64,000 nt of DNA from Macrostomum lignano. Taxonomy: Eukaryota. Location: assembly GCA_002269645.1 (NCBI GenBank), contig NIVC01000435.1, positions 1 to 64,000 of the forward strand. Direction: 5' to 3'. The stretch's first letter is position 1, and every line of letters begins with the position of its first letter. The notes under the pieces were generated by a model. The model was not told the origin of the DNA, ran no database searches, and was given only the letters and a program-made list of their open reading frames with translations. Of this stretch, positions 285-43,369 are shown piece by piece. The translations under genes were made by a program, and so were the position numbers.

Positions 285-2560
285 AGAGCCGTTCCCCTGA
301 ATTACGGCAGCAAGTGGACAAGAAAATTAGCGAGATGCGCGTCACGGGATTATCGAGCCGTCCTGCAGTCCATGGGCGAGTATCTGCTTGTGGTGCGAAA
401 GAAAAACAACGAGATTCGAATCTGCACCGACTGGAGAGCCCTCAACTCGTGCACCGTGAAGGACGCCTACCCGCTGCCTCCGCTGTCTGCTGCGCTGGAC
501 GCGCTCACTGGAAGCAGTTGGTTCAGCACTCTTGACCTCCGCCAAGGTTCCTGCAGGTTGAGCTGCGAGAGCAAGACGGAGAAGACCGCTTTCTACACCA
601 CGCAGGGCCTGATGCAGTACAGGAAACTCGGGTTTCGGCCTCTGCAACGCCCCGGCAACCTTTCAGCGCTGATGGACCTAACGATGGCCGGCCTGAACTG
701 GACAGAGGTGCTCACGTACATGGACGATCTGATTCTGTTTAGTCAGACCTTCGAGAAGCATGCGGAAACACTGAACAGGTCCTGGGAAGACTGCAGTCTG
801 CTGCCTCAAATTGAACAAACGCAAGAGCTACTTCTGCTTCCAGGAGGTTGAGTACCTAGGACACAAAATCTCGGCAGAAGGCATTCGACCAACTCAGGAC
901 AAGGTCAGCGCTATCCAGTCCATCCGATACCCGAATGCGCTGAGGATGTTCGCCGGCTTGTCGGCATGCTGGCTTCTACCGGCGTTTCGTTCCGCACTTC
1001 GCCAGCATCGCTAATCCGCTTCATCAGGCGGACTCAGAAGAGTCGACAGTTTCAATGGACAACTCAGTGCGATGACGCTCTGCGGAAGCTGAAGTCAGCT
1101 CTGTCGACACCACCCGTACTGAAGCTGCCTGACTACTCCAAGGGATTCCGGTTGTGCTGTGACAGCAGCGGAGTGGCCATCGCCGGCGTCCTGAGCCAGC
1201 TCCACGAAGATGCCGAGTGTCCGGTAGCCTACGCGTCGAGAGTCCTGAACAAAGCGAGCGCAATTATTCGACTACCCACAGAGAGTTTCTTGCGGTGGTC
1301 TGGGCGATGAAGCATTTCCGGAACTACTTGGCGTTCGCTGGCGAAATTCTCGTCTTCACCGACCACAAGCCGTTGCAAGGACTGCTCAACACGAAGGAGC
1401 CAGAAGGCCGGCTAGCCAGATGGATTACGTTTCTGCAGGAGATCAACTTCAAGCTGCTCTTCAGACCTGGTCGCGAAAACGTGGTTGCGGACGCACTGAG
1501 CGAGCAGCGGCGACCCGGCTGCACCCTGCCTGGTCGGACAACGACATCCGTGTAGCGCAGGCTGACGACCCAGTGCTAGCGGCGGCTCGACAAGTGCTCC
1601 TCGGACAAAGGCCAAGACGTGGCAAGGCTGCAGATGACGCAGAACACCTGGTGAGGACAGAGAAGCTGGACCTTGGTGAAGATGGCGTCCTCAAGAAGAG
1701 TGGCCAACCCGTCATCCCGCGGCAGCTTCGCCAGGACCTGCTGCAGCTGCTGCACGACGATCCTGTAAGCGGGCACCTCGGAACCGAAAGGACGCTGGCC
1801 AGAGTCGTCAGCAGAGCTTGGTGGCCGGCCTAAAGGACGACGTCCAGCACTGGGTGAGCAGCTGCGAAGTGTGTCAGCGTCGCAAGGTACCGCATCAGCA
1901 CCAGAGGCACCGCTGCAGATCAACACCGTGCCATCAGCTCCTTGGGAGATGGTGCAGGTGGACATCAAAGGGCCCCTCCCAGAGACTGAAGCCGGCCTCA
2001 GGTACATCATCTGCTTCACGGACGTGTTTTCCAAGTGGGTTGAGGCGACCGCGTGTCCAACATTGAGGCCCGGACGGTTGCGGATGCGCTGCTAAGGAGT
2101 GTCGTTCTTCGCCACGGAGCGCCCGAAGTCATCCACTCCGATCAGGGTCGTCAGTTTGAAAGTGACATCTTCCAAGAGCTGTGCCGCCTGCTGGATATTC
2201 GCAAGACAAGAACGACACCCTTCCATCCCAGCGGCAACCCTGCAGTCGAGCGGTTCAACCGAACATTAGGCGACATGCTGCGTACTGCATGGAACAGCAG
2301 AACAAATGGGCGGACTTCCTGCCGTACGTCATCTGGGCGTACAACTCTTCAGCACACTGCATACCAAGAGGTCGTTACGCAGTGCTTCACGGATGTATCC
2401 CGGCAGAGCTCAGTTTACCTGCAGGCGGCGAAAAGGCTCGTCACGGACACGCTGGCAGACGCTCGCACCGGCTTGCAGCTCGTGCGGCAGCGCCTGCAGT
2501 CGACACAGCGGTCACGGAAGCAGCAGTACGACAAGCCAGCACTTCACGCCGATCCAAGTC
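285..2560 (+). mobile_element. Ty3/Gypsy LTR-retrotransposon pol remnant (RT, RNase H, integrase), 5'-truncated and multiply frameshifted; no LTRs seen
   Basis: Motifs are spread over successive frames. RT: 'VRKKNNEIRICTDWRALN..KDAYPLP', 'TYMDDLILFS'. RNase H: 'LCCDSSGVAIAGVLSQ..PVAYASRVL', 'ERNYSTTHREFLAVVWAMKHFR..FTDHKPL'. Integrase zinc finger: 'LHDDPVSGHLG..CEVCQRRK'. Integrase core: 'WEMVQVDIKGPLP..FTDVFSKW', 'HSDQGRQFES..TTPFHPSGNPAVERFNRTL'. The RT-RH-IN order is Gypsy-type. Confidence 0.93.
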
Positions 2561-3373
2561 GGCAGCTGGTGATGAGCAATGTTGTCCAATTCGGCGGTGC
2601 TGGGGTGTGCTCGAGAGGCTGTCACCTAATCTCAAAAGCCGGCCGGAGAAAGCATGCAAAAACTGTTCGTGCAAGCTTCCTGGCACGATGCAACACATGT
2701 CGATCTGACCTCTTGCTGGATACCGACCCACTGCAAGTGAGCGCTATTAAGCCCTCATCGCACTCAACATCAACGCTATTAAGTGGAACGAAGTTTTATG
2801 ACATAAATCTTTTGTTTGAATTGAAACAGAGCTCGCATCGCGAAGTTTTCTTTTTTCAGTTTTATTGCGCTCTAAGCATTTTTAAAGATTTACAATCCAT
2901 TAAAAGTCTTCATATGGTCACAGACCATAGTGTAGGAGGCAGCCATTTTAAAGCATATCGCCAACGCTGCATGCAGTGAGCAACTTCGTAGCGATTGTAA
3001 AATTATGGTCTGAAATATATGCAGATGCGAGCAACCATCGGTTATTGAAGTCTCTTCGACGCCACATGAAGCTTTTTGTCTGTCTGTTTAGCTTCATGTA
3101 GCTGTGGCTGCGTAGTCTTGTGTACAGTTGCTGTGTGCACCTCTGGCACAGGTAAACTCGCACAGGGCAGAGATAAATAGGGGTTTAAGGTAAGAGTAGT
3201 GGGCAATGTAGCTCGTACAATGACCATCCAACGCTCTGTGATGATGGCTTTTTCTTTCTCCAGTTTTGCTAGCCTCGCTACCCTATTTAAGACATTTCGA
3301 ATGCGCGATGAAATTGTAAACGCAGCCGACTGTTTTAACCATTTTTACAAGCACAGAAATAAGCAACAATATT

Positions 3374-6300
3374 ATGCAAACCATCGATTTTCACGTGCGT
3401 AGCGACGACCAGAGAAATCGTCGTCAAGTTGTTCAGGCGCGCCGTCAGGAGCAGTCGCAGCAGCTGTTTAGAAGTAGAGAAGTGGGCAGCCGGAATGACC
3501 AGGTGCTGGAGACAGCGATATCCAGTACCAGTTCGAAGAGTCGGCTCCGAGAGCTCACGACGTTGAGGGCGGAGCAACCTTTGGCACGAGAGTCTGCAGT
3601 GGCCGACGCTCCATCGTCGCCAACCTCACCGGCGTCGATGTCGCCTCAGGCTCGGCCAAGCATTGACAGTCAGCAGGGAACTTCGCTGCCTGTGACTGAT
3701 AGTTTGCTCAAGCGACTAATCGACGAGTCGAAGTTTGACCGGCTGATTGAGCACCTCAAGCTGCGCGGCACCTATTCCAGCATAGTTGGAAACCGCACTG
3801 TTGGCGACTTGGCCGCCGAGAAAGGCAACTGTCTGTTGCTGGACAGGCTGCACGAGAGCTTGGCCTACGATTTTGATCGGAGGAACAAAGACGGCTTGGT
3901 GCCGTTCCACTACGCCGTTAAGAAGCGCCAGCTTGACGCGCTCACAAAGCTAATAGAACTGGGAGCCTCAGCGGATTTGCCACTGCCGTCACTGTCCGGC
4001 AGAGGACAGTCGGACACTCCGCTGCACCAGGCCTGCTCAATCGCTGATACAAAACTGCTTAACACTCTGCTGGGTAAGTGTTGTTTAGTAATCTTTCAAG
4101 TTTCCGTTCCAGAAGCGACACTTACTTGAACTCTGATTTATTACGCTCATACTGTACCTACTGTACCGGTATATATGTTTAAAAGAACATAATATACTAG
4201 TATTTTGAATCAGTACTCTTACTCTGTACCTGTACAGTGGCTATTTCCCAGCATTATAATCGGAAATTTCTACAACTTCCCGCTTGTCCATTTCCCAGAT
4301 CATTGCAGAGCCAGTCTAAACGTTGTTGACGCGCAGGGCAACTCGCCTCTGCACAGAGCGTGCCTTGAAGACTCGCTAGTTGTTGTGAAAATACTGATGC
4401 CGCACATCACGGAACCGGTGCTGAATATGCAAGGATTTGAAGGCAAAACCGCCCTGCACATTGCTGTGCTCAACCAGAACCGAGAGATTGTACGGCTGCT
4501 CCTCACCGCCAAGTGCACGGGTGCTTTGGTCGACATACCAGCTGACAATGGTAAGACGGTTATCGACATCATTCTGGAGCTCAACAACCACATGATGCTC
4601 AACGACTTCATTTACTACTATACTGTGATCAAAATGAAAGGCGTGAGAGCCCAGTGTTTTAAGGAGTTGTCGTTCAATCAGCAGTTTGGCCAGTATTTGG
4701 ACTTTCTAGCAAACGTGGACAACGAGTTTCGAGCCTGCATCATCAACATGAAGGAGATTAGCGCGGACGAGAGGCAACTCCTGTGTGAAAAGTTGCGAGA
4801 CGACGATCGGATTGACTTGATCGAGTTCACCGAGGTCATCCTGCAGCTGCTGCAGACTGAAGACATTCACGACATCATTCACGAGGCTGATAACGATGAT
4901 GTGCTCATTAAAATTGTTGAAAACATCGTGCACTACGTACTGTTCAGAGAGGATGCTATGCTCCTAGAACGGATCATGACGTGCGGGGTGCTCTGGTCTG
5001 AAGTTTCCGTATTGATAGAGAAAAACCTCGACTCGCTCTATCTGCAAGCCCCCGAGAGAGAGGTGAACGGTATTATTAAGCATTTTCGGACGAACTTTGT
5101 TGAAAATGAGGCTGTTGATCATAAAAAATTGGCCGAATATTATGGCGACCTGTTGTCCTGCTACAGGCTGAAGGGAGACTGCGAAGAAACAAACCCGGAC
5201 AGTCCGTACATGCGAAATCCTTTTCGAACTCTGCCCGTGTGGTCGATTCTGTCCGGCCGATTGTGCCTTACTGAACTGCTATTGCAGCAGGAAAAATTCG
5301 ATGTTGTACCGCTATCGCTGTTCTGCGCCGGCGTGCTGCGAACTTTCCCGGCTAACCAGGACATTGTGGTTGATGAGGAGGACGTCGAAGACATGGCGCT
5401 GACCTGCGAAAGATTTGCTCGCAAAGTGGTAGAGAAGGCGTACACAATTGACACCTCCTACAACCGGACTGTCAGTCTGGATTACTTACTGCGGCCGATG
5501 GAATCTTATGGCGGCGTCTCGTGCGTTCGGCTGGCGGCTTCCAACGGTTGCGCAGTGTTCCTACAGAGCGAGCTGTGCCAACACGCTCTGGACAAGTTGT
5601 GGTTCGATTCCTTGCTCTACCTGAGTCCGGTCACTCGAGAAGTCGTGATCTGGATGGGCGCCATTCCGATGAACATCTTTGTGCCCATTCTGCTGTCCTA
5701 CTTCGATAGCAAAGAGGTCGTAGCGAGACAGAAGCACGAAGAGCGGCCGTACATCAGCGACCGTCAGTCAGCTCAGAAGTCGGCCAAGTTCCACTTGCTG
5801 CCCTTAGAATCGGTCGAACCGGACAAAACTGCCGACAGCACCGACGGAGAGAATCTGATTAGGCCAAGCGTTGAGTTGAAGCAGTTTGGCAATTATTTAC
5901 CGCACAGGAGGCGGTCGAGCCTGATGAGACCATCAGGTGCAGAAAATGACAACCAAGTTCCTCTTGTGGACTTTGGGCACGATGAGCAAGACTGCCAGTC
6001 TCAGAGCACGCTAAACTATTCGGAATCAAACTATTTTTGCCACTTCAGCAAACTTTTAATCAATTTCTATCGTACGCCGGGTGTGAAGTTTCGGTACCAC
6101 GTCGCTTCGCATATTGTACTGCTCGGACTGATGTCCTACTTCCTGCTCGTAGATTTCAAATATGAAATCTCTAACATTGAAATTATTGTCTACCTAATTC
6201 TTGGCGGCTTGTTTCTGGAAGAGATGGGCGAAATGGTGCAGTACATCGTCCATAATGACATTCAAAGCTACTTCAATAGTAAGTGGAACGTGATTGATTT

Positions 6301-7979
6301 GTCAGCCCTGCTGTCAGGTGCGACGGGTTTTGTGATTCGCCTGGTAGAGATCAAGCACAACTCCGAGTGGTCCGACATGATGCGAGACTTCGAGGACTCG
6401 GCTTGGTATTCAGCCAGAATTTTTCTTAGTAAGAAAATCAATCATTGTTTGACTCTTAACTATAGACACAATCTACCATTGTCTACCTCCAAAACTATAG
6501 ACACAATCTACCATTGTCTACCTCCAAAACCATAGACACAATCTACCATTGTCTACCTCCAAAACTATAGACACAATCTACCATTGTCTACCTCCAAAAC
6601 TATAGACACAATCTACCATTGTCTACCTCCAAAATCATAGACACAATCTACCATTGTCTACCTCCAAAACTATAGACACAATCTACCATTTTCTATATCC
6701 AAAAGCATAGACTTAATCTACCATTGTCTGACTACAGAACCATAGACACAATCTACCATTGTTAAACTCAAAAAACCATTAAACACAATCTACCAATGTC
6801 TACCTCCACAAAGATGAATTGATTTCACTACTGATAAAAAACGTTCTATTTATAAGTAGTATATAAAGGAAACTGCTAATTGTTTCTTGCAGGCATCTGC
6901 TGCACCCTCTACTGGATTCGGCTGCTGTACATTTCGAATGTGCTGGAGAATCTCGGGCCCAAGCTAAGAATGATCGCCCAGATGATCACCAAGGATCTGC
7001 TGCCATTTCTATTGATTCTGTTCATCTTCATCCTGGGATTCGGGTGCTGATGCACAGCTTGCTGTACCCCAACGGGTACAAGGCCTGGAACTCGGCTCGT
7101 ATCAGCAGTACTCACGTGCTGCTGGGCATGCTCAAGATCTGCTTCTACAGCATGGTTGGGGAGTACAGTCTGGATACCATTATTGGGGACGATTCGTGCG
7201 AAAATGTGTACCAAAATTATACTCTAAATGAAGGCAACTGTCCGCACAAAATCGGACGGTGAGTTGGTGGCACTGGATATTTAGAATTTTCAGAGTTTAG
7301 TTTAAGGATTATTTACCCAATATTCTAAAATCCTGCTAACAGGTACCTGGTGCCCTACCTGATCCTGCCTCTCTACGTGATCGTCACGGAGATCTTGCTG
7401 CTGAATCTCATCATCGCCATGTTCAGCAAGACAATCGAGACCATCGACTCGCGCAGCACCGATCTGTGGCAGTTCGAACGCCACGATCTCGTTATGGAGT
7501 TCCAGACTCGTTCGAGTCTTCCGCCGCCACTCAACGTGTTCGATCTATTCTACAAGCTGCTCAGGCTTCTCCGGAGACTGACTCAGCATTCCAGATGCGT
7601 CCTCTGCAGCTGTGTCAACGAAGTCGAGACCGTTTTTAGCCGCCGCGTCGTGCTGCAGTTTCTGCTGTTCCAAGCGCTCAGCCTGCGCAATAACCGGCTG
7701 AGGCTGATGCAGCAGAGTCTGCCGAAACAGGAGACCGAAGCCGAGAAGATGCTGATGAAGATGAGAAAAATTGTCGAGTCCGAGTTGACAAAGCTGAAGC
7801 AGCAACCGGCGGGTAGCGACCGCGGCAGCGAAGGTGACAGCGACAGCGACAGCGACCCGCCGAGAGCCATCACAGCCAACACTCTGTTAGGCAATTTGCC
7901 GAGGACAAGGCTGCCAAGGCCCAGTCTCGCCCAGACCAGATGGAGACAGGCTCTGCGACTGCAGACCATGTGGCGCTAG
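3374..7979 (+). CDS. Ankyrin-repeat TRPM-like channel, paralogue 1. Exons 3374-4073, 4299-6428, 6893-7258, 7343-7979; about 1277 aa if a 1-nt deletion at about 7042-7044 is corrected
   Basis: GT-AG junctions have the same phases (1,1,2) as paralogue 2. About 6 ankyrin repeats (GLVPFHYAVKK, DTPLHQAC, GNSPLHRAC, GKTALHIAV). MHR3/4-like region (HYVLFRED..CGV..LDSLY; LPVWSILSGR..GGVSCVRLAASN..LDKLW). S1-S6 with WNVID, YWIRLL..LGPKL, pore FYSMVGEY, LLLNLIIAMFS, TRP box LWQFER and LPPPLN. Exon 3 is 366 nt versus 367 nt in paralogue 2. Confidence 0.88.
6461..6810. repeat. 35-bp minisatellite (ATAGACACAATCTACCATTGTCTACCTCCAAAACT), about 10 copies, in intron 2 of TRP paralogue 1
   Basis: Unit starts at 6461 and 6496 (period 35). 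Confidence 0.95.
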
Positions 7980-8126
7980 CAACCCTTCTTATTGTTGCTC
8001 TTCGAGTTTTTTTAGTGGCCAATTAATTTTTGTTTGCAAAAATGTCTGTATTTTTCTGCTGTGCCAATTCTCAAATTTTAACACTTGGCAGCGTGATACT
8101 TCCTTAACCCATTTTTTAGCTGTTTC

Positions 8127-9816
8127 CATAGGCGTAGGAACGTTTCAAAAAGTGGGGGGGGCAGGTTCAGTGGCGGATTTGGGGGGTGCGCACAGGGCGC
8201 ACGCCCCTGTCGAGTTAGATTTTTTATATATGGAAAATGCACATTATCATGTACCGATTATTTTCAGAATCCGTCTTGTCAGCACTCATTTTATAAAGCG
8301 CCGCAGGTGCTCATTTTAGCGCCACAGACACTCATTTTAGCGCCACAGACACTCATTTTAGCGCCACAGACACTCATTTTAGCGCCACAGACACTCATTT
8401 TAGCGCCACAGACACTCATTTTAGCGCCACAGACACTCATTTTAGCACCGCAGGCACTCATTTTAGCACCGCGGGCACTCATTTTAGCGCCGCAGGTGCT
8501 CATTTTAGCGCCGCAGGCACTCATTTTAGCGCCGCAGGCACTCATTTTAGCGCCGCAGGCACTCATTTTAGCACCACAGGCACTCATTTTAGCGCCGCAG
8601 GCACTCATTTTAGCGCCGCAGGCACTCATTTTAGCGCCACAGGCACTCATTTAAGCACCGCAGGCACTCATTTTAGCGCCGCAGGCACTCATTTTAGCGC
8701 CACAGACACTCATTTTAGCGCCACAGACACTCATTTTAGCACCACAGACACTCATTTTAGCGCCGCAGGCACTCATTTTAGCGCCGCAGGCACTCATTTT
8801 AGCGCCGCAGGCACTCATTTTAGCGCCGCAGGCACTCATTTTAGCGCCGCAGGCACTCATTTTAGCGCCACAGACACTCATATTAGCGCCACAGACACTC
8901 ATTTTAGCGCCGCAGGCACTCATTTTAGCACCACAGGCACTCATTTTAGCGCCGCAGGCACTCATTTTAGCGCCACAGGCACTCATTTAAGCACCGCAGG
9001 CACTCATTTTAGCGCCGCAGGCACTCATTTTAGCGCCACAGACACTCATTTTAGCGCCACAGACACTCATTTTAGCACCACAGACACTCATTTTAGCGCC
9101 GCAGGCACTCATTTAAGCACCGCAGGCACTCATTTTAGCGCCGCAGGCACTCATTTTAGCGCCGCAGGCACTCATTTTAGCGCCGCAGGCACTCATTTTA
9201 GCGCCACAGACACTCATATTAGCGCCACAGACACTCATTTTAGCGCCGCAGGCACTCATTTTAGCACCACAGGCACTCATTTTAGCGCCGCAGGCACTCA
9301 TTTTAGCGCCGCAGGCACTCATTTTAGCGCCACAGGCACTCATTTAAGCACCGCAGGCACTCATTTTAGCGCCGCAGGCACTCATTTTAGCGCCACAGAC
9401 ACTCATTTTAGCGCCACAGACACTCATTTTAGCACCACAGACACTCATTTTAGCGCCGCAGGCACTCATTTTAGCACCACAGGCACTCATTTTAGCGCCG
9501 CAGGCACTCATTTTAGCGCCGCAGGCACTCATTTTAGCGCCGCAGGCACTCATTTTAGCGTCACAGGCACTCATTTAAGCACCGCAGGCACTCATTTTAG
9601 CGCCACAGACACTCATTTTAGCGCCGCAGGCACTCATTTTAGCGCCGCAGGCACTCATTTTAGCGCCGCAGGTGCTATGTTTTGTCGCCCTGCAGCAAAA
9701 TGCATTCATGCAAAGCAGCAAAAAACAAAAATAAACAAAAAGTCTACATTTTACGTTTAAACATTTTAAAAAGTGGGGGGCCATAGCCCCACTGTCCCCC
9801 CGTTCCTACGCTTGTA
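8127..9816. mobile_element. Non-autonomous TIR DNA transposon (hAT-like) carrying a 21-bp minisatellite
   Basis: Left end CATAGGCGTAGGAAC (8127). Right end GTTCCTACGCTTGTA (to 9816) differs from the expected complement only by transitions. Flanking direct repeat GCTGTTTC at 8119-8126 and 9817-9824 (8 bp; a 10-bp TAGCTGTTTC reading is also possible). Confidence 0.75.
8285..9675. repeat. 21-bp minisatellite (GCACTCATTTTAGCGCCGCAG), about 65 copies, with 231-bp (11-unit) higher-order blocks
   Basis: The 'MSACGAK' periodic ORFs show the 21-nt period. The variant unit TTTAAGCACC recurs at about 9112, 9343 and 9574. Confidence 0.97.
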
Positions 9817-10994
9817 GCTGTTTCAGAAGTAATCCAGTTTGCCGTTTTACCTGCTCATTTTTTACTAGAAATTTTTGGCTACACAAATTACTTTTTACAC
9901 TTTTTGCTTACTAAAAAAGCGGTTTTCTTTGTTAAATTGATCAATTTCTAATTTTGCCAAACTGAATGAATTAATTTTCCGACGCTATTTAATCGCGAAC
10001 GCGTTTACTTTTAACCAATATTATTCAAGGTAAAAATTGTCCGACTCCTCTCGCTTGTTGAATTTAACTACTTGGCGATGCCTGCACACTGGGGTAGATT
10101 TGGCGTAATTTCTTTCCGGCAAAATGCAAACAATTTTAATCAGCATACTCAGACTCTAGACTGTAGAGAAATACCTGAATTGAGTATATGTAAAGTTCTG
10201 AGGTTCGCCAACTGACCGGGTTCATCTTTGTATAGATAGCAGACTTAGACTTGGACTAATTGATGCTTTTTTTACCTGAAGTTGACTAAAGAAACCCCGC
10301 ACGTGGCCCGGAAGATGAAAAGCTTCAGTCCAAAGCAACCTCTGCTGAATGCAATCCCTTGATCATCCGACGGAACAGGTAAAACAATTGACAAAATCCC
10401 TAATGCAGTACATTCTGCTGCACAGCCTGTCACCCCAATGCCATAAAACCCTAGACTGGCCTAGAGGCACCAATTAAATAGTCCCGTTTCTCGTCCCCTT
10501 GGCGTTTTTCTCTAGCCCTGTGCGGTAGGGAGCGGGGGATAGAGGCGGACAGAGGTGCATGGGAGTGTACGCGCTGGAGGCGGCGACTGACTCACTGGGT
10601 GTAAGCAGTAAAGACTGCCTTGCAGAGAGAGAGGGCAAGGCGGAGAGGTTGGGCTGCCCCGGCCACTCCTTCCTCTGCAGAAATACACGAAAAAGCCTTA
10701 TTTAACGATCCAGCTGCTTTCTGTACGAAGCAAAGCCGTGTGAACTCTTGTGCGCAGCGCATGTAATTCTTTCTTATCGCGTCGCGAGCTGCGACCGACT
10801 CGTTCGTGTTAATGAACGTCTGCTGCATGCACTACTGACTCTGAGTGAGCCATAAAACAGTTCTTTATCAGCAGCTACTGTAGCACTGCATGGTCACTGG
10901 ATCACTGGCAGTTAGCTACAACAAGTGTTTAAAAACAGTTAGTCAATATGCCAACTAACACACAGTTGATTGTTTAATTTAACTGACATCCGGC

Positions 10995-13900
10995 ATGTCT
11001 GGGTTCAACATCAGCAGCGAGCAGCAACGGTTTCAGTACTCGCGCCAGGTGTCTCGAGAGCGCCACGATTTTGACCAACCGAGTCGACGAACTCAACTGA
11101 ATGTCCTCCACGGAGGCCAAAATTTTTACCCGGTCGGTTCAGCGCCGTTGCAATGGCGAATCCGACGGTTTGAAAACTTTTCGACGGCTGGAGGTGGCGC
11201 CGGGGCGCCTTTGTCGTCGTCTAGGCCGACTTCTCGAGTCCCGGCAGCGCCTTTTCCGGCTGGTGCCGCGCCGTCATCCGCAGCGGTAGGAAGAAACTTT
11301 CCGAGTTTCCGGTCGAACCGATCGACCGCGGCAACAACCAGCGATTTTGATCCCATCGTGTTGGACGCTTACAAGGCGAACCGACTGGAGCAGCTCAAGC
11401 GGCTTCTAACCATCAAAGGCGTGTATACGGAAGTCAACAGGTGCAAAACAGTAGCCGATCTAGCTGCGGAAGATGGCAAGTTCGAGGTGCTGGATCTGCT
11501 GAAGGAATTGTCGGTCGACTTCAACAGGCGAAACGCTGAAGGCATGGTGCCGCTGCACTACGCCTTGAAGAAGCGTCACTATCGAACTATTCGATACCTG
11601 CACAGTTTGGGTGCCAGTCCAGACATTCCTCTGCCGTCGTCCATAAGCGGACGGGGACTGTCCGACTATCCGCTGCACGTGGCCTGCGCTAGTGCGGACA
11701 AGAAAATGCTGGACACATTGCTTGGTATGTGCAGATTCGCAGCGCTCCTTTTGTGGGGGCAAAGCTTTCCCGCTTCCCCTTAGGGAGGCCATAAATTTCA
11801 AGGACTCCTAATGGCGATCGCCACTTCCAGTATATGTCTCGCAAGCTTGCATACATATAAAAATATAAATTTTCAATCTTAAAATGACTTACTAAATGGT
11901 TTGTTTGAAACCGCAGACTACTGCGGCGCCGAGCTGCACGTGCTGGACGCTCAGGGCAACACGCCGCTGCACCGCGCCTGCCTCGAGGACTCGCTCGTTG
12001 CGGTAAAACGCCTGGCGCCGCATCTCAGCAGCGAGGTGCTCAACGTGCGCGGTCACGAAGGCAAAACAGCGCTGCACATTGCTGTGCTGAATCAGAATCG
12101 ACAGATAGTAGACTTGCTATTGAGCAAGGGAACGCTGGTTGACGTGCCAGCGGACAGCGGCAAGACAGTCATTGACCTCATCCTGCAGCTCAACAATCCG
12201 ATGCTGCTTAACGATTTCGCTCGATTCTACTCAATCCGCATGACCGAGGGCGTCACGGCGAGAAACCTGATGGCACTGTCGCACGAGAAGCACTTCGAAA
12301 AGTACCTCGAATTTCTCTCTCACGTAGACAACGAATTCAACGAGTGCACAATGGAGATCAAGGACATCAGCGAGGTTGAAAAGGAAACTCTGTGCGCCAA
12401 ACTGCAGCACGACGATCGAATCGACCTCATGGAGTTCAAGGAGGTCATCGTCCAGCTGTTGCAAACTGAGGATATTCATTACTTGATCATGGAGGATGAT
12501 CGCGATGTGCTGGTCAAGATCGTAGAGAACATTGTGCACTACGTCCTGTTCAGAGAGGACGCTGTGATGCTCGAGCGAATTATGTACTGCGGAGTGCTCT
12601 GGTCGAAGGTGTCGCTATTGATCGAGGATCATCTCGACTCGCTGTACATCCAAGCTCCAGAGAGAGAAGTCAACGGTATCGTCATGCACTTCAAATCCCG
12701 ATTCGTTGAGCAAAACAGAGTTCGGCACGACAAACTATCTAAGTACTACGGGAGCGAGCTGTCTTGCTACAACCTGCAGCCGTACTACCTGGGATTCAAT
12801 CCCAACATTCAGTACATGCGTCACCCGATGACCACCCTGCCAGTCTGGTCAGTTCTGTCCGGCCGGCTGTCCCTCACCGAGCTGCTACTTCGCCAGGAGA
12901 AGTTCGACGTCGTTCCGCTGTCCCTGTTCTGCGCCGCCCTGCTGAGAACTTTCCCAATGAATCAGGAACTTGTCGTGGAAGAGGAAGAAATCGAGGCTTT
13001 AGCTCTGACCTGCGAGAAATTTGCTCGAAAAGTTGTCGAAAAGGTCAACTCAATCGATACTTCGTACAATCGCTCTGTCAGTGTCGACTACCTGCTGAGA
13101 CCACTAGAGTCCTACGGCGGCGTCTCCTGCGTGAAGCTGGCCGCCTCCAACGAGTGCTCCAGGTTCCTGCAGAGCGAGCTGTGCCAGCGCGCCCTCGACA
13201 AGATGTGGTTCCGATCGCTGCTGCACATGAACCCCATCCTGCGCGAGATTATCATTTGGATGGGCGCCATTCCGCTCAATTTCCTGGTGCCGCTGGTGCT
13301 GCTCTACTACGACGAGAAGGAGATGCGCACCAGGCGTCGCCACGAAGAGCGCAGCTTCGTCCAGGAGGATGAGACGACGCCGATTTACGAAAAATTCCAT
13401 TTGCTGCCGAAACTGCCGCTGCCAGCGGACCAGTCCGCTGACAGTCTGGAAGACCAGATCACTCGGCGACGCGGCTCCAACGCTCATTCGCTGGGAACTC
13501 AAGCTGGGCAGAAGCTCGCCAAGGAGGCCAAGCAGCAAGCTCACTCGTCCTCCTCTCTGCACAAGGAGAATCAGCAGAAAAAGGAGGCGCCAATAGAGGA
13601 GATCGAGTTCCGACAGATGGCCCGTCCGAACTCGAAGGTGTCGGAGAAGTCGGACGCCTCCTCGCTGCTGCACAAGGCTGACGAACAGGATGAGCACTCG
13701 ATTTTGAGCTCGATCGGCACCCGAGCGCTCAGACGGTTCCGGCGATTCTTCCAGCTGATCTCGGAGTTTTACGATACCCCGGCCGTGAAGTTCCGCTACC
13801 ACGTGGCTTCGCACGTGCTCCTGGTGGCTCTGCTGTCCTATCTGCTGCTGATGGACTTCCAGTACGAGCTGAGCATCAAGGAGATCATTGTGTACGCCAT

Positions 13901-16900
13901 TCTCTCCGGCATGCTGCTAGAAGAGGTTGGCGAGATAGCCCAATACACGGAGCACGACGACATCAAGTCGTACTTCAGAAGCAAATGGAACATCATCGAC
14001 ATCACAGCTCTGACCTGTGGGGTGGTCGGCTTCTCGATTCGCATCAGCGAGATCAAATACTCGCAGGAGTGGAGCGACATGATGCGGGACTTTGAGGACA
14101 AGGCCTGGTACACAGCGAGGATCAGCCTGAGTGAGTTCTTCGGTACTGTTTTGAGAATGTCTCTATCCAATTTCTCTAGAGTGTCTCTTGAATCTTTATA
14201 ATGTCTCTATAATGTCTCAATCTTGTATCTGTAGAATGCCTGTAGAATGTCTCTAGAATGTCTCTATCGTGCATCTGTAGAATGTCTTTATAATGTCTCT
14301 AGAATGTCTCTATCGTGCATCTGTAGAATGTCTTTATAATGTCTCTAGAATGTCTATAGTATATCTGTGGAATGTCTTTATAATGTCTCTAGAATGTCTC
14401 TATAGTATATCTATAGAATGTCATTATAATGTCTGTAGAATGTCTCTATAGTATATCTGTAGAATGTCTTTATAACGTCTCTAGAATTTCTCTATCGTGT
14501 ATCTGTAGAATGTCTTTATAATGTCTCTAGAATGTCTCTATAGTATATCTGTAGAATGTCTTTATAATGTCTGTAGAATGTCTCTATCGTATATCTGTGG
14601 AATGTCTTTATAATGTCTCTAGAATGTCTCTATAGTATATCTATAGAATGTCATTATAATGTCTGTAGAATGTCTCTATAGTATATCTGTAGAATGTCTT
14701 TATAATGTCTCTAGAATGTCTCTATAGTATATCTGTGGAATGTCTTTATAATGTCTCTAGAATGTCTCTATAGTATATCTGTAGAATGTCATTATAATGT
14801 CTGTAGAATGTCTCTATCGTGTATCTGTGTAGAATGTCTCTAGAATGTTTAAAATATGTGTAGATTGTCTCTAAAGTGTCTGTAGAATGTTTGTAGAACG
14901 TCTGTAGAATGTCTACTAAAAGGCCAATAAAAAATCTTTCTATTCCGCGCAAGGAGTGTCGTCATTTAAGTTTTTGCTTATTTTTTTGTTGTTCAGCGAC
15001 CAAAAAGTAGCAAAACTCTTTCTTCTCTTCAAGTGTGGCAGTGTTCTGTAGCAGTAAAAATGGTAGGAACCCACAGATAGATGATGTAGCAGGAGCTCTT
15101 GCAGTTAAGAACTGTTTCGTCTGTCTAACCCTAACTTGGAGTGGAAATGCAGTACGCTATGCATTCCAATAGTTCTGGGCATTGGCAAATTTGCATAAAT
15201 TGCACTAAAGAGCTACTGCATGTGTACTGGTTTCCGGCGGAAGGGTTGCTATGAATATGCATATAGATTATAAGAAGCTGCTTCACTGAGAATGCGCAAT
15301 TGAACATCACGGCTGAATTTGGCATAGCAATAAATTTCGCAGTTCAAATGCATGCGGAAAGCAATCCAGCTAGTTAGCGCTTTGGTTTTTAAGTGGAAGC
15401 CTGTTTGCCGACTTGTCTCAAGAGATTAGAGGACATTTTGGTATTTGGTACTAGGATCTTGCTTGGGACAGAGCTTGTATGTATGAGATTATTGGGATTT
15501 CAAGCTGTACAAGTGGTGCCTAAAAGTACCTCAAATAGGTGCCTTAAAGTATCTCGAATAGGTGCCTAAAAGTATCTCAACTTGGTGCCTAAAATTATCT
15601 CAAATTGGCGCCTAAAAGTATCTCAAATTGGTGCCTAAAATTATCTCAACTTGGCGCCTAAAAGTATCTCAAATTGGCGCCTAAAATTATCTCAGATAGG
15701 TGCCTAAAATTATCTCAAATTGGCGCCTAAAATTATCTCAAATTGGCGCCTAAAATTATCTCAAATTGGCGCCAAAAATTATCTCAAATTGGCGCCTAAA
15801 ATTATCTCAAATAGGTGCCTAAAGTATAGTATCTCAAATTGGTGCCTAAAATTATCTCAACTTGGCGCCTAAAAGTATCTCAAATTGGCGCCTAAAATTA
15901 TCTCAAATAGGTGCCTAAAGTATAGTATCTCAAATTGGCGCCTAAAATTATCTCAGATAGGTGCCTAAAATTATCTCAAATTGGCGCCTAAAAGTATCTC
16001 AAATTGGCGCCTAAAATTATCTCAAATAGGTGCCTAAAGTATAGTATCTCAAATTGGCGCCTAAAATTATCTCAACTTGGTGCCTAAAAGTATCTCAACT
16101 TAGTGCCTAAAAGTATCTCAACTTAGTGCCTAAAATTATCTCAAATTGGTGCCTAAAAGTATCTCAGATTGGCGCCTAAAATTATCTCAAATAGGTGCCG
16201 AAAATTATCTCAAATAGGTGCCGAAAATTATCTCAAATAGGTGCCCAAAATTATCTCAAAAAAGTGCCTAAAATTATCTCAAATTGGCGCCTAAAATTAT
16301 CTCAAATAGGTGCCTAAAGTATAGTATCTCAAATTGGCGCCTAAAATTATCTCAAATAGGTGCCTAAAGTATAGTATCTCAAATTGGCGCCTAAAAGTAT
16401 CTCAACTTGGTGCCTAAAAGTATCTCAAATTGGTGCCTAAAAGTATCTCAGATTGGCGCCTAAAATTATCTCAAAAAGGTGCCTAAAATTATCTCAAATT
16501 GGCGCCTAAAATTATCTCAAAAAGGTGCCTAAAAGTATCCCAATTCGGTGCCTAAAGGTGTCTCAACTTGGCGACTAAAAGTATCTCAAATAGATGTCTG
16601 AAAGTATCTCATTTAGGCGCTAAAATCAGAAAATGTCTTTACATAGCTACTCAAATTGAACTTCAATCAGTAGTATTTAGTGTAGCGCACTGCTATAATC
16701 TTTATTTAACAATATTTGCAGGCATCTGCTGCACCCTGTACTGGATCCGGCTGCTGTACATTTCCACAGTGCTGGAGAATCTCGGGCCCAAACTGAAAAT
16801 GATTGCAAAGATGATCACTAAGGATCTGCTGCCATTTCTATTGATTCTCTTCATCTTCATCCTGGGATTCGGAGTGCTTATGCACAGCTTGCTCTATCCA

Positions 16901-18714
16901 AACGGATACAGGGCCTGGAATTATGGTCAATTGAACAAGGTTCACGTGCTGCTGGGCATGCTCAAGATCTGCTTCTACAGCATGGTTGGGGAGTACAGTC
17001 TGGATACCATTATGGGCGACGATTCCTGCGAAATGATCTACGAAACACGGGAGAACAATACCAGCAGTTGTCCGCATCATTTTGGCCGGTGAGTGAGATT
17101 CCAGTCATTGTTGGCCCTGGGACTTCCAAAACCCTGGGAGAGAGGAGGGAATCCCCCGGGGTTTAGCCATGGGTCTGAGGGAGAGAGAGGAAGGGAATCC
17201 GCCGGGGTTTTGCCGTGGGTCTGAGGGGGAGAGGGAAGGGAATCCCCCAGGGTTTAGCCATGGGTCTGAGGGAGAGAGAGGAAGGGAATCTCCGGGGGTT
17301 TAGCCGTGGGTCTGAGGGAGAGAGAGGAAGGGAATCATCCAGGGTTTAGCCATGGGTCTGAGGGAGAGAGAGGAAGGGAATCTCCGGGGGTTTAGCCGTG
17401 GGTCTGAGGGAGAGAGAGGAAGGGAATCCCCCAGGGTTTAGCCATGGGTCTGAGGGAGAGAGAGGAAGGGAATCCCCCACGATTTAGCCATGGGTCTGAG
17501 GGAGAGAGAGAGGAAGGGAATCCCCGGGGGTTTAGCCATGGGTCTGAGGGAGAGAGAGGAAGGGAATCCCCGGGGGTTTAGCCATGGGTCTGAGGGAGAG
17601 AGAGGAAGGGAATCCCCCACGATTTAGCCATGGGTCTGAGGGAGAGAGAGAGGAAGGGAATCCCCGGGGGTTTAGCCGTGGGTCTGAGAAAGAGAAAGAA
17701 AGGGAATCCGCCAGGGTTTATTAGCCATGGGTCTGAGGGGGGAGAAAGAAGGGAATCCGCCAGAGTTTAGCCATGGGTCTGAGGGGGGAGAGAGAAGAGG
17801 GGAATCTCTAGGATTTAGCCATGGGTCTAAGGGAGAGAGGAAGGGAATCCGAATCCCCCAGCAGAGGTAAGCTCTCTGCAGCAAAGGTTAATCCCCAAGC
17901 TACTCCCATTGGCCATTAGTACTCTGATTAGACAGAGAGTAATCCCATGTACAAATCTCAACGGAACCACAGGTACCTGGTGCCCTACCTGATCCTGCCT
18001 CTCTACGTGATCGTCACGGAGATCCTGCTGCTGAATCTCATCGTCGCCATGTTCAGCAAGACAATCGAGACCATCGACTCGCGCAGCAAAGGTCTTTGGC
18101 AGTTCGAACGCCATGATCTAATTGAAGAATTTGAAACTCGGTCCAGCCTGCCGCCGCCCCTGAACGTGTTCGATCTAGTTAGAAAATTTTTTCTATTGCT
18201 CAAGAGCTACTGCCGCCGAGTGTGCCACAAGAACTGTCGATGTCGCACCAGACACGCTGGTGGAGGCGGCGGCGGCGGCTCCTTCCGCCAGAAGCTGGTC
18301 ACCCAGTTCCTGCTGTTCCAGGCGTTCGGCCTGCGCAAATGTCGCGAAGAGATGATGCGCCAGTGCCTGCCGAAGCAAGAGACCGAGACCGACTCTATGC
18401 TGGACAAAGTGCGAGACATTGTCGAGGCCGAGGTCAACCGGTTGATCAGCGTCACGGGAATGTCGAACGATGAAAGCGATGGCAGCGAGGGTGCACAGAG
18501 CATCGCTGCGGACACTCTGCTAGAGGCCACGCCTCCGCCGCCACCGCCGCCTCCGCCGCAGAGTCAGTCGAGCAGCAGGCCTCCGTTGTTCCCTACTGGT
18601 ACCAAATCGCTCGACTGTCTGGCAGACGATGGCGGCGTCGGTGGAGCTCCCGGCGGTGCCGGATCGGGCGTCGGTGGCAGACCGAGGGTTCGACTGCGAG
18701 AGCTGATCAAGTAG
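10995..18714 (+). CDS. Ankyrin-repeat TRPM-like channel, paralogue 2, intact. Exons 10995-11724, 11917-14130, 16722-17088, 17973-18714; 1350 aa
   Basis: The four exons sum to 4053 nt (1351 codons) with canonical GT-AG sites. Same ankyrin, MHR3/4, S1-S6 and TRP-box (LWQFER..LPPPLN) architecture as paralogue 1. Confidence 0.93.
14150..14915. repeat. About 46-bp AT-rich minisatellite (TGTAGAATGTCTTTATAATGTCTCTAGAATGTCTCTATAGTATATC) in TRP2 intron 2
   Basis: Direct tandem units built on an AGAATGTC core. Confidence 0.93.
15515..16625. repeat. About 23-bp minisatellite (CCTAAAATTATCTCAAATTGGCG) in TRP2 intron 2
   Basis: More than 40 tandem units. Confidence 0.95.
17135..17860. repeat. About 46-bp purine-rich minisatellite (GGGTTTAGCCATGGGTCTGAGGGAGAGAGAGGAAGGGAATCCCC..) in TRP2 intron 3
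   Basis: GCCATGGGTC recurs at 17441 and 17487 and onward. Confidence 0.95.
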
Positions 18715-19180
18715 ACTATCGCCATGTACAGAGTTAGTTGGTTTTTGCAAGCTAATTACCCTACTCTCCTTGCATGGATAAATCATGGATGAAGCATCCA
18801 TGATGCCATGTATGGATCATACCTGAACATGTATGGAGCCATACCTGATCATACATGGTTCCACGTAAACTTCATCCATGGTTACTTTCCATCCATGTAC
18901 ATTGATGTATGATTTTAAATATAATTTTCCTTACTACACTACTGTTAGTAGAACGCAATGTTTGCGTAGGTTCATTTTAAAGCTGAAATTTTCTAAACAA
19001 ATTCGGCAGCATCTTTAGTGCTGCTGAGAAATATGTTTCCATTCCCTTATAAATCACTTTCAAAACAAAAAAGTATCAGAACAAATACTTATGCAATTAA
19101 ATGTAGAAGTAATTGAAAACTCGTATGATGACCATTTCGAGACTTATATTATTAATGATAATTAGGCATAATTCATTTCA

Positions 19181-19724
19181 AAGTACTGTAAGAAAAAATA
19201 AGACAGCTCAGTCTCAGAGAGCTTTAAAATACAGAATGGACAGAATTTGACGCATTTCAAGGTACTGTAAGAAAAAATAAGACAGCTCAGAGAGCTTTAA
19301 AATACAGAATAGACAGAATTTGACGCATTTCAAGGTACTGTAAGAAAAAATAAAACAGCTCAGAGAGCTTTAAAATACAGAATAGACAGAATTTGACGCA
19401 TTTCAAGGTACTGTAAGAAAAAATAAAACAGCTCAGAGAGCTTTAAAATACAGAATAGACAGAATTTGACGCATTTCAAGGTACTGTAAGAAAAAATAAA
19501 ACAGCTCAGAGAGCTTTAAAATACAGAATAGACAGAATTTGACGCATTTCAAGGTACTGTAAGAAAAATAAAACAGCTCAGAGAGCTTTAAGATACAGAA
19601 TAGACAGAATTTGACGCATTTCAAGGTACTGTAAGAAAAAATAAAACAGCTCAGAGAGCTTTAAGATACAGAATAGACAGAATTTGACGCATTTCAAGGT
19701 ACTGAAAGAAAAAATAAAACAGTA
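19181..19724. repeat. 73-bp tandem repeat (about 7 copies) inside the EnSpm element
   Basis: GGTACTGTAAG starts at 19261 and 19334 (period 73); units are near-identical. Confidence 0.95.
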
Positions 19725-43283: not shown

Positions 43284-43369
43284 GCTTCCGGTGCTGTGAC
43301 TTTCGGTTGATATAAACAAATGCCTTTTTGTGCTTTTTATTGGGCCGTGGCAGAAATTAAATTGAGATT

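What the first reader, a model, noticed from the sequence alone, without database searches (positions are those of the whole stretch)
3374..18714. Tandem TRPM-like channels in which canonical ankyrin repeats replace the SLOG/MHR1-2 domain
Seen in sequence: both paralogues have about 6 canonical ankyrin repeats. These are followed directly by TRPM-type MHR3/MHR4 segments, a TRPM-type S1-S6, a pore (FYSMVGEY with an outer-pore Cys pair) and a TRP helix (LWQFER..LPPPLN). They have no SLOG domain, no NUDT9H and no kinase. Established knowledge: TRPM channels normally begin with SLOG/MHR1-2 and lack canonical ankyrin repeats, which mark TRPA, TRPV, TRPC and TRPN. Inference: this is either a domain-swapped chimera (ankyrin sensor on a TRPM pore) or a poorly described TRP lineage that may bridge TRPM and the ankyrin TRPs. 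Either would imply different gating. I cannot exclude prior description in invertebrate TRP surveys.
Basis: partly seen in the sequence, partly recalled or inferred. Interest (0 to 1): 0.85.

Follow-up and report, generated by a model that had tools for sequence, protein, structure and literature searches.

The report
Flatworm ankyrin-TRPM channels, already known type
The window carries two neighbouring genes of the flatworm Macrostomum lignano for TRPM-type ion channels that have ankyrin repeats where the usual SLOG domain sits, but this design is already described in parasitic flatworms as TRPM_MCLZ, the target of the drug meclonazepam, so these are new members of a known kind.

Summary
Two head-to-tail genes on the + strand (3374-7979 and 10995-18714) each have four exons. 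Each encodes about 7 canonical ankyrin repeats, then a TRPM MHR3/4 region, then a TRPM-like S1-S6, pore and TRP helix. Neither has SLOG, NUDT9H or a kinase, and no SLOG-like reading frame exists anywhere in the 64 kb. Gene 2 is intact (1350 aa) and 99% identical to GenBank BOX15_Mlig019746g1 of Macrostomum lignano. Gene 1 has a 1-base deletion in the S5 coding sequence (7043/7044), so it is either a recent pseudogene or a sequencing error.

The architecture is already published as flatworm TRPM_MCLZ (Smp_333650), also called 'TRPM-like'. That channel has been cloned, expressed and shown to be a meclonazepam-activated cation channel. The window genes share its diagnostic residues: the S1 His pair, the pore-helix Tyr and the TRP R-S/T. 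They fall in a SLOG-free clade with the trematode and cestode orthologues (bootstrap 1.00).

What is new is modest. The family reaches a free-living flatworm, where it has expanded to at least 10 paralogue groups. Its nearest relatives are flatworm TRPMs with ankyrin repeats in front of an intact SLOG (bootstrap 0.73). This points to gain of ankyrin repeats followed by loss of SLOG, not to an ancient bridge lineage.

The parts
3374..4073 (+). Gene 1 exon 1: N-terminal low-complexity region and ankyrin repeats 1-4 (first part)
   Evidence: ORF and GT donor at 4074; Pfam Ank hits
4299..6428 (+). Gene 1 exon 2: remaining ankyrin repeats, MHR3/4, linker, S1 to start of S4, all in one continuous ORF
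   Evidence: Pfam Ank plus PF25508 (34.7 bits) lie in the same ORF.
6893..7258 (+). Gene 1 exon 3: S4-S5, pore helix FYSMVGEY (7143-7166), outer-pore Cys pair
7043..7044 (+). Gene 1: 1-base deletion relative to gene 2, giving a frameshift in S5
   Evidence: The same deletion is in NIVC01001714.1.
7343..7979 (+). Gene 1 exon 4: S6, TRP helix (7464-7529), C-terminal tail, stop
10995..11724 (+). Gene 2 exon 1: N-terminal region and ankyrin repeats 1-4 (first part)
   Evidence: The start codon is the same as in GenBank model P0001.
11917..14130 (+). Gene 2 exon 2: ankyrin repeats 4-7, MHR3/4 (about 12384-13346), disordered linker, S1 to start of S4, in one ORF of 738 codons. The Ank-to-TRPM junction therefore cannot be a splicing or annotation artefact.
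16722..17088 (+). Gene 2 exon 3: S4 (R991, Y994), S5, pore helix and filter FYSMVGEY (16973-16996), Cys1084 and Cys1098
17973..18714 (+). Gene 2 exon 4: S6, TRP helix LWQFERHDLIEEFETRSSLPPP (18094-18159), C-terminal helices, Pro/Gly-rich tail, stop

Best explanation
These are two tandem paralogues, 57-58% identical, of the flatworm TRPM_MCLZ-type ('TRPM-like') cation channel family, in the free-living flatworm Macrostomum lignano.

Domain order of each subunit:
- About 7 canonical ankyrin repeats occupy the position that SLOG/MHR1-2 holds in ordinary TRPMs.
- The TRPM MHR3/4 region follows.
- A disordered linker of about 130 residues comes next.
- Then come S1-S4 (the voltage-sensor-like domain), the S5-pore-S6 domain, a TRP helix and a short helical C-terminus.

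Inferred mechanism, by homology with the cloned schistosome channel and with solved TRPM structures:
- Four subunits form a non-selective, Ca2+-permeable cation channel.
- Gating is controlled from the S1-S4/TRP-helix cavity. This is the cavity that binds meclonazepam in Sm.TRPM_MCLZ, praziquantel in TRPM_PZQ and menthol or icilin in TRPM8.
- The cavity also keeps the TRPM2/4/5/8-type cytosolic Ca2+ site (E913, E916, N935, D938, E1156, with Q replaced by E at the second position).
- Without SLOG and NUDT9H the channel cannot use the nucleotide/ADP-ribose sites of TRPM2-like channels. The ankyrin domain probably supplies the outer cytoplasmic layer, for subunit packing or partner binding.
- The S4 residue that sets meclonazepam sensitivity is Tyr, as in the insensitive parasites. 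Low meclonazepam sensitivity is therefore predicted.
- The natural stimulus is unknown.

Inferred origin: a flatworm TRPM first gained ankyrin repeats in front of SLOG. One daughter lineage then lost SLOG. That lineage is single-copy in parasites and expanded in Macrostomum.
For: Shown here:
- Gene models and domains.
- The transmembrane region is most similar to TRPM and the fold search returns TRPMs.
- In an exhaustive search of 1.84 billion representatives, every closest hit with a full N-terminus has Ank and none has SLOG. They come from Macrostomum, Opisthorchis, Dicrocoelium, Schistocephalus and Fasciolopsis.
- P0136 (Dicrocoelium, 1378 aa) carries 12 of the 13 published Sm.TRPM_MCLZ fingerprint residues at constant offsets. 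The 13th is the Tyr the paper reports for Plagiorchiida.
- P0132 and P0147 carry the published cestode variants.
- The Opisthorchis model has two channel domains, matching the published exon 3a/3b duplication.
- Genes 1 and 2 share the fingerprint: H872/H876 (S1), E913 (S2), I-D (S3), R991 and Y994 (S4), Y1067 (pore), R1160-S1161 (TRP).
- The S1 His pair occurs in 20 of 25 clade members against 1 of 101 other TRPM representatives. The pore-helix Tyr occurs in 22 of 25 against 1 of 105.
- NJ trees: the Ank-only clade has bootstrap 1.00 on MHR3/4+TM (551 columns, 91 sequences) and the Macrostomum subclade 1.00. Ank-only plus Ank-SLOG flatworm TRPMs has 0.73. On S1-TRP alone the values are 0.51, 0.97 and 0.94.
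- The residue roles are from PMC5976436.

From the literature: Sm.TRPM_MCLZ was cloned from cDNA, gives Ca2+ signals and inward currents in HEK293 cells, and its S4 His/Tyr/Phe controls sensitivity (PMC10788528, PMC12861061).
Against: - No expression or functional data exist for the Macrostomum genes. Channel activity, Ca2+ dependence and drug insensitivity are inferred.
- Gene 1 is frameshifted as assembled.
- My trees are neighbour-joining only, with Kimura-corrected distances. The backbone among TRPM groups is unresolved (bootstrap below 0.35). No TRPS, TRPC, TRPA or TRPV references could be included.
- The link between the Macrostomum and parasite subclades is only 0.51 on the channel domain alone.
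- I could not obtain the Smp_333650 sequence itself. Identity of the parasite sequences with TRPM_MCLZ rests on the published residue fingerprint, protein length and annotations.
- Exon structure differs: 4 exons with two introns inside the channel domain here, against 3 exons with the whole channel domain in exon 3 in schistosomes.
Confidence: 0.85

Rival explanations
1. This is an ancient TRP lineage that branched before SLOG was fused to the TRPM/TRPS ancestor. On this reading it kept the ancestral ankyrin domain and truly bridges TRPM and the ankyrin TRPs.
For: The backbone of my trees is unresolved (bootstrap 0.08-0.32 for the deep nodes). The S1 His pair also appears in the vertebrate TRPN1 outgroup sequences. 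Published work regards MHR3 as holding degenerate ankyrin repeats (PMC13143021), so an Ank-MHR3/4 order could look ancestral.
Against: Every identifiable member is a flatworm. The clade groups at 0.73 with flatworm TRPMs whose ankyrin repeats lie upstream of an intact SLOG. That position cannot be the ancestral ankyrin domain. The channel domain scores 113 bits to TRPM against 33 bits to NOMPC. PF25508, the TRPM-specific MHR3/4 model, is above its cut-off. The published ML tree of flatworm TRPs places the group next to the TRPMs (PMC12861061).
Confidence: 0.08
2. This is an artefact: an ankyrin-repeat gene has been wrongly merged with a 5'-truncated TRPM gene by assembly or annotation.
For: Macrostomum assemblies carry many 1-base indels, and several database models in this family are fragments or fusions.
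Against: Ankyrin repeats 4-7, MHR3/4 and S1-S4 lie in a single uninterrupted exon in both genes (4299-6428 and 11917-14130). The same order recurs in at least 10 Macrostomum paralogue groups, trematodes and a cestode. The schistosome member was amplified from cDNA and is functional (PMC10788528).
Confidence: 0.02
3. Sub-question: gene 1 is a recently inactivated pseudogene, not an intact paralogue with a sequencing error.
For: The 1-base deletion at 7043/7044 truncates the protein in S5. The same deletion is in contig NIVC01001714.1, which differs from the window by about 1.4% substitutions in the neighbouring gene 2 region. No database protein corresponds to gene 1.
Against: Downstream of the shift the other frame stays open and highly conserved: pore helix, S6 and TRP helix are nearly identical to gene 2. 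In 6310-8280 the two contigs differ only by six 1-base indels and no substitutions. That is the signature of long-read consensus errors, and the two contigs may share reads there.
Confidence: 0.45

Closest known systems
Flatworm TRPM_MCLZ (Schistosoma mansoni Smp_333650 and its 63 catalogued orthologues in trematodes, monogeneans and cestodes), the 'TRPM-like' group
   Same: N-terminal ankyrin repeats instead of SLOG/MHR1-2. TRPM-type MHR3/4, S1-S6 and TRP helix. No NUDT9H or kinase. Similar length (1350 against 1380 aa). Shared pocket and pore residues: S1 H..H, S2 E, S3 I-D, S4 R, pore-helix Y, TRP R-S/T. Same clade in my trees.
   Different: Free-living host, not a parasite. Many paralogues (at least 10 groups, two of them in tandem here) against a single copy. 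Four exons with introns inside the channel domain against three exons. Y864 is replaced by M/L and Y1117 by F. Tyr sits at the S4 sensitivity position, so meclonazepam insensitivity is predicted. There are no functional data.
Canonical TRPM channels (nvTRPM2, TRPM2/4/5/8, TRPM3/7)
   Same: MHR3/4. Best sequence and fold matches for the channel domain. The five-residue cytosolic Ca2+ site pattern. The outer-pore Cys pair. A G-E pore filter as in nvTRPM2/TRPM3/TRPM7. TRP box W-x-F-x-R.
   Different: No SLOG/MHR1-2. No NUDT9H or kinase. No Pfam TRPM_tetra hit. Tyr in the pore helix where TRPMs have W or F. R-S/T where TRPMs have R-P after the TRP helix.
Flatworm Ank-SLOG-TRPM subfamily (e.g. Macrostomum BOX15_Mlig003066 and Mlig025325, Clonorchis KAG5447154, S. 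mekongi KAK4474030)
   Same: N-terminal ankyrin repeats on a TRPM core. Nearest neighbours of the Ank-only clade (bootstrap 0.73).
   Different: These keep a full SLOG domain between the ankyrin repeats and MHR3/4. They have fewer detectable repeats and are 1700-1900 aa long.
TRPN/NOMPC and other ankyrin TRPs (TRPA, TRPC, TRPV)
   Same: Canonical ankyrin repeats N-terminal to a six-TM TRP channel. NOMPC is the top whole-chain fold hit because it has both parts.
   Different: The channel domain is only distantly similar (33 bits). The TRPM-specific MHR3/4 is present here. There are 7 repeats, not the 29 of NOMPC.

Membership tests
Flatworm TRPM_MCLZ / 'TRPM-like' | N-terminal ankyrin repeats with no SLOG/MHR1-2 | tested here: met
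   Pfam; SLOG profile negative on the proteins and on the whole window; 7 repeats in the model
Flatworm TRPM_MCLZ / 'TRPM-like' | Channel domain clusters with TRPM_MCLZ orthologues, apart from other TRPMs | tested here: met
   NJ bootstrap 1.00 on MHR3/4+TM and 0.51 on TM only. NJ only, and the parasite sequences were identified as orthologues through the published fingerprint, not through Smp_333650 itself.
Flatworm TRPM_MCLZ / 'TRPM-like' | Conserved binding-pocket residues (H827, H831, Y864, E868, R943, Y1117 in Sm numbering). H831 and R943 are invariant in all 63 orthologues. | tested here: inconclusive
   H, H, E and R are conserved in genes 1 and 2. Y864 is replaced by L/M and Y1117 by F (the F variant is reported for Gyrodactylus). 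That is 4 of 6 identical, including both invariant residues.
Flatworm TRPM_MCLZ / 'TRPM-like' | Activation by (S)-meclonazepam; functional cation channel | not testable with these tools
   Tyr at the S4 H946 position predicts low sensitivity (PMC12861061)
Canonical TRPM | N-terminal SLOG (MHR1/2, Pfam LSDAT_euk) | tested here: not met
Canonical TRPM | MHR3/4 (Pfam PF25508) and TRPM-type S1-S6 plus TRP helix | tested here: met
   34.6 bits against a cut-off of 27; best PDB matches are TRPM, E 1e-32 to 1e-37; fold search
Canonical TRPM | C-terminal tetramerising coiled coil (TRPM_tetra) | tested here: inconclusive
   No Pfam hit. Helices follow the TRP helix, but the C-terminus beyond aa 1215 was not modelled.
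TRPS (ced-11-like) | SLOG plus C-terminal Nudix domain; no ankyrin repeats | tested here: not met
   No SLOG or NUDIX, and Ank is present. Definition from PMC7306681. No TRPS reference sequence was available for the tree.
TRPN / TRPA / TRPC / TRPV | Channel domain groups with that family | tested here: not met
   For TRPN only: the NOMPC channel domain scores 32.8 bits against 113 bits for TRPM, and the TRPN1 sequences form the outgroup. TRPA, TRPC and TRPV were not tested in a tree, and none appears among the top PDB sequence or fold matches.

The most novel reading that the evidence does not exclude
The Ank-MHR3/4-channel family may be an old lineage that predates the SLOG fusion and has been retained only in flatworms. 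It would then be a living intermediate between the ankyrin TRPs and TRPM/TRPS, which would overturn the published 'ankyrin-free, SLOG-linked TRPM-TRPS ancestor'. My deep tree nodes are unresolved, so this is not strictly excluded. The grouping with Ank-SLOG flatworm TRPMs and the flatworm-only distribution make it unlikely.
Probability: 0.08. Interest if true: 0.75.

Novelty: new member of a known kind. Interest (0 to 1): 0.3.

Why it matters
TRPM_MCLZ is a validated anthelmintic target, but its natural stimulus and the role of its ankyrin domain are unknown.

- Finding the family in free-living, transgenic-tractable Macrostomum, expanded to many paralogues, gives a laboratory model for asking what these channels sense.
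- It dates the architecture back at least to the common ancestor of Macrostomorpha and the parasitic flatworms.
- The flatworm TRPMs with ankyrin repeats in front of SLOG suggest a stepwise route by which the N-terminal module of a TRP channel was exchanged.
- For TRP evolution in general this is a lineage-specific variation, not a new family.

Tried and rejected
- The word-index homology search was nearly useless. The full-length query was swamped by generic ankyrin proteins. The ankyrin-free query returned only 2 hits. The Dicrocoelium channel-domain query returned 1 hit, a monogenean fragment from Cichlidogyrus. So I could not retrieve Smp_333650 or the S. bovis and S. turkestanicum accessions named in PMC10788528.
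- No supplementary sequence files are held for PMC12861061 or PMC10788528.
- No ML tree software was available, so I wrote NJ with bootstraps.
- A single-query phmmer ankyrin detector missed true ankyrin regions and was replaced by multi-query detection.
- I looked for a SLOG exon in all six frames of the window and found none.
- I considered an annotation fusion and rejected it, because the junction lies inside one exon.
- The organism behind the Logan sample DRR639838 (P0128/P0129) could not be identified.
- Whole-chain TM-scores in the fold search are low (0.3-0.4), because a monomer model of a multi-domain subunit does not reproduce the domain orientations. I used the ranking only.
Full report
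**What is in the sequence**

The window is eukaryotic DNA from the free-living flatworm Macrostomum lignano. The spliced product of the second gene is 99% identical over its full length to GenBank 'hypothetical protein BOX15_Mlig019746g1'.

ORF listing and inspection of the junctions gave two head-to-tail genes on the + strand. Each has four exons, GT-AG introns and identical intron phases.
- Gene 1: 3374-4073, 4299-6428, 6893-7258, 7343-7979.
- Gene 2: 10995-11724, 11917-14130, 16722-17088, 17973-18714, giving 1350 aa.

The two proteins are 57-58% identical.

Gene 1 lacks one base at 7043/7044 relative to gene 2 (GGATTCGG^GTGCT). This shifts the frame within S5. The downstream sequence remains open and conserved in the other frame.

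**Check of the observation**

Pfam on gene 2 gives:
- Ankyrin families at E 5e-24 to 4e-11 over residues about 116-343.
- The TRPM-specific MHR3/4 model PF25508 at 34.6 bits (cut-off 27) over residues 493-661.
- Ion_trans at E 4e-15 over residues 878-1142.
- No SLOG (LSDAT), NUDIX or alpha-kinase hit, even at E<=1.

Gene 1 pieces give the same picture.

An AlphaFold2 model of residues 100-1215, built on a 16-sequence family alignment, has mean pLDDT 74.5 and pTM 0.64. It shows seven helix-turn-helix pairs before the MHR helices.

A profile built from 63 SLOG domains finds nothing in the six-frame translation of the whole 64 kb at E<=10. Ankyrin repeats 4-7, MHR3/4 and S1-S4 lie in one uninterrupted exon in both genes. 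The junction therefore cannot be a splicing or annotation artefact.

There are seven repeats rather than six. Gene 1 is frameshifted as assembled.

**Which TRP family the channel part belongs to**

Against all PDB sequences, the region from pre-S1 to the TRP helix matches TRPM channels at E 1e-37 to 1e-24. These include nvTRPM2 (113 bits), TRPM8, TRPM2, TRPM3, TRPM4 and TRPM5. The channel domain of NOMPC scores only 33 bits.

Foldseek of the model against the PDB puts NOMPC first, because it has both ankyrin repeats and a channel. Ranks 2-50 are all TRPM structures.

In the alignment, the nvTRPM2 Ca2+-site residues E893, Q896, N918, D921 and E1110 align with gene 2 E913, E916, N935, D938 and E1156. 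Their roles are described in PMC5976436.

**Relatives elsewhere**

The word-index search was swamped by ankyrin proteins or returned almost nothing.

The exhaustive HMMER search of 1.84 billion representatives, using the ankyrin-free part of gene 2, gave 1597 hits. The top tier runs from E 1e-242 to about 1e-45. It consists of proteins with ankyrin repeats, MHR3/4 and Ion_trans but no SLOG:
- about ten further Macrostomum paralogue groups;
- Opisthorchis viverrini and O. felineus;
- Dicrocoelium dendriticum;
- Schistocephalus solidus;
- Fasciolopsis;
- a few sequences of unknown origin.

This rests. Below that tier come ordinary SLOG-bearing TRPMs. They include Macrostomum's own and TRPM2-like proteins of molluscs and brachiopods.

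**It is already described**

The literature search led to the Marchant and Chan laboratories' work on the schistosome target of meclonazepam.
[quoted passage not shown] It was amplified from cDNA. It gives Ca2+ signals and inward currents in HEK293 cells on (S)-meclonazepam.
- PMC11731825 states that it 'lacks the NH2-terminal MHR1/2 or SLOG domain' and instead has ankyrin-repeat modules.
- PMC12861061 catalogues 63 orthologues in trematodes, monogeneans and cestodes. It proposes the label 'TRPM-like' and lists the binding-pocket residues.

None of these papers mentions Macrostomum or free-living flatworms for this channel.

**Test of membership**

I could not retrieve Smp_333650 itself. I therefore used the published residue fingerprint: L826, H827, H831, Y864, E868, I892, D893, R943, H946, Y1038, Y1117, R1120, T1121.
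- The Dicrocoelium protein P0136 (1378 aa) carries 12 of the 13 at constant offsets. The 13th is Tyr, as the paper reports for Plagiorchiida.
- P0132 and P0147 carry the cestode-specific substitutions tested in the paper.
- The Opisthorchis model has two channel domains, matching the reported exon 3a/3b duplication.
- Genes 1 and 2 read Y-H-H-L/M-E-I-D-R-Y-Y-F-R-S at these positions.

The S1 His pair is found in 20 of 25 members of the clade but in only 1 of 101 other TRPM representatives. The paper says no other schistosome TRPM has this pair. The pore-helix Tyr is found in 22 of 25 against 1 of 105.

Neighbour-joining trees with 200 bootstraps gave the following.
- On S1-TRP (300 columns, 130 sequences, TRPN1 outgroup): Macrostomum clade 0.97, parasite clade 0.94, both together 0.51.
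- On MHR3/4 plus S1-TRP (551 columns, 91 sequences): the SLOG-free clade 1.00, the Macrostomum subclade 1.00, gene 1 + gene 2 1.00.

I conclude that the window genes are Macrostomum co-orthologues of TRPM_MCLZ.

**Origin of the architecture**

Among the flatworm SLOG-bearing TRPMs, one subfamily has Pfam-significant ankyrin repeats (32.9-37.3 bits, cut-off 27.3) upstream of SLOG. It appears in five gene models from four genera: two Macrostomum paralogues, Clonorchis, Opisthorchis and Schistosoma mekongi.

In the larger tree this subfamily is the nearest neighbour of the SLOG-free clade (bootstrap 0.73). Other flatworm TRPMs are not. This fits a two-step history inside flatworms: ankyrin repeats were added in front of SLOG, and SLOG was then lost in one daughter lineage.

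The deep backbone of my trees is unresolved, and I had no TRPS, TRPC, TRPA or TRPV references. The older-lineage reading therefore keeps a small probability.

**How it probably works**

By homology, the protein forms a tetrameric, non-selective, Ca2+-permeable cation channel.
- It is gated from the S1-S4/TRP cavity, which binds drugs in its relatives.
- It retains the TRPM2/4/5/8-type Ca2+ site, so cytosolic Ca2+ is a likely co-activator.
- It lacks the SLOG and NUDT9H nucleotide sites.
- The seven-repeat ankyrin domain takes the place of MHR1/2 at the cytoplasmic periphery.
- Tyr994 at the S4 sensitivity position predicts poor meclonazepam sensitivity (PMC12861061).

All of this is inference. 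Nothing is known about expression or function of the Macrostomum genes.

**Gene 1**

The same 1-base deletion is present in contig NIVC01001714.1 of GCA_002269645.1. That contig differs from the window by about 1.4% substitutions across gene 2. Across 6310-8280, however, it differs only by six 1-base indels with no substitutions. This looks like long-read consensus noise. Whether gene 1 is a recent pseudogene or an intact gene with a sequencing error remains open.

**Verdict**

The finding is real and was correctly described.

The new elements are three: extension of the family to a free-living flatworm, a lineage-specific expansion that includes this tandem pair, and the Ank-SLOG relatives that suggest how the domain exchange happened. 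I rate it as a new member of a known kind, with interest 0.3.

Noticed in passing
window 7043-7044: Gene 1 has a 1-base deletion relative to gene 2 inside the S5 coding sequence. The same deletion is in GenBank contig NIVC01001714.1. It is either a pseudogene or a consensus error.
   Followed up: partly
L002 (NIVC01001714.1) 1-1975 vs window 6310-8280: The two public versions of this stretch differ only by six single-base indels and no substitutions. Two of the indels (6955, 7197) fall in gene 1 exon 3. This looks like long-read consensus noise.
   Followed up: partly
window about 18.7-26.1 kb vs L002 12.0-12.3 kb: About 7.4 kb present in the window is absent from the other contig. It contains an intact 766-aa ORF (20052-22352, - strand) with DUF1258 and DUF4218 (transposase-associated) domains. 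This is probably a presence/absence polymorphism of a DNA transposon.
   Followed up: partly
P0139, P0301 (Macrostomum), P0150 (Clonorchis), P0298 (Opisthorchis), P0310 (Schistosoma mekongi): A flatworm TRPM subfamily has ankyrin repeats upstream of an intact SLOG domain (Ank-SLOG-MHR3/4-channel). It is the nearest neighbour of the SLOG-free clade. The texts of the papers I read do not mention it.
   Followed up: partly
Alignment of S1: The S1 His pair typical of the TRPM_MCLZ clade also appears in the three vertebrate TRPN1 outgroup sequences and in one other TRPM representative (P0189). The alignment of the outgroup in S1 is weak, so this may be coincidence.
   Followed up: no
P0126 / P0281 (Opisthorchis viverrini): These gene models of 1906-2059 aa contain two channel domains. 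This matches the published duplicated terminal exon (3a/3b), here merged into one prediction.
   Followed up: partly
window 8297-9672; 6458-6808; 14193-14848; 15514-16611; 17138-17850; 19174-19722: Long minisatellite arrays: 21 bp x 65 between the two genes; 35 bp x 10 in gene 1 intron 2; 46-bp and 23-bp arrays in gene 2 intron 2; a 46/140-bp array in gene 2 intron 3; 73 bp x 7.5 downstream. Similar arrays occur further along the window (about 34.7-35.6, 40.5-41.7, 49.5-52.8 and 54.2-56.4 kb).
   Followed up: no
window 314-2979 (+): Degenerate LTR-retrotransposon pol remnant just upstream of gene 1. Reverse transcriptase and integrase core are split over several frames.
   Followed up: partly
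window 29269-31564 (-), 33179-38218 (-), 42597-43319 (-): Neighbouring genes: an equilibrative nucleoside transporter, a PLOD-type procollagen-lysine hydroxylase/glycosyltransferase, and a Myb/SANT-like DNA-binding protein.
   Followed up: partly
L001 (Logan DRR639838 contig, 1298-4516): An intronless 1072-aa Ank + channel protein (P0129) branches beside the parasite TRPM_MCLZ core but has Tyr instead of both S1 histidines. The source organism is unknown, so whether the family exists outside the known flatworm groups is open.
   Followed up: partly
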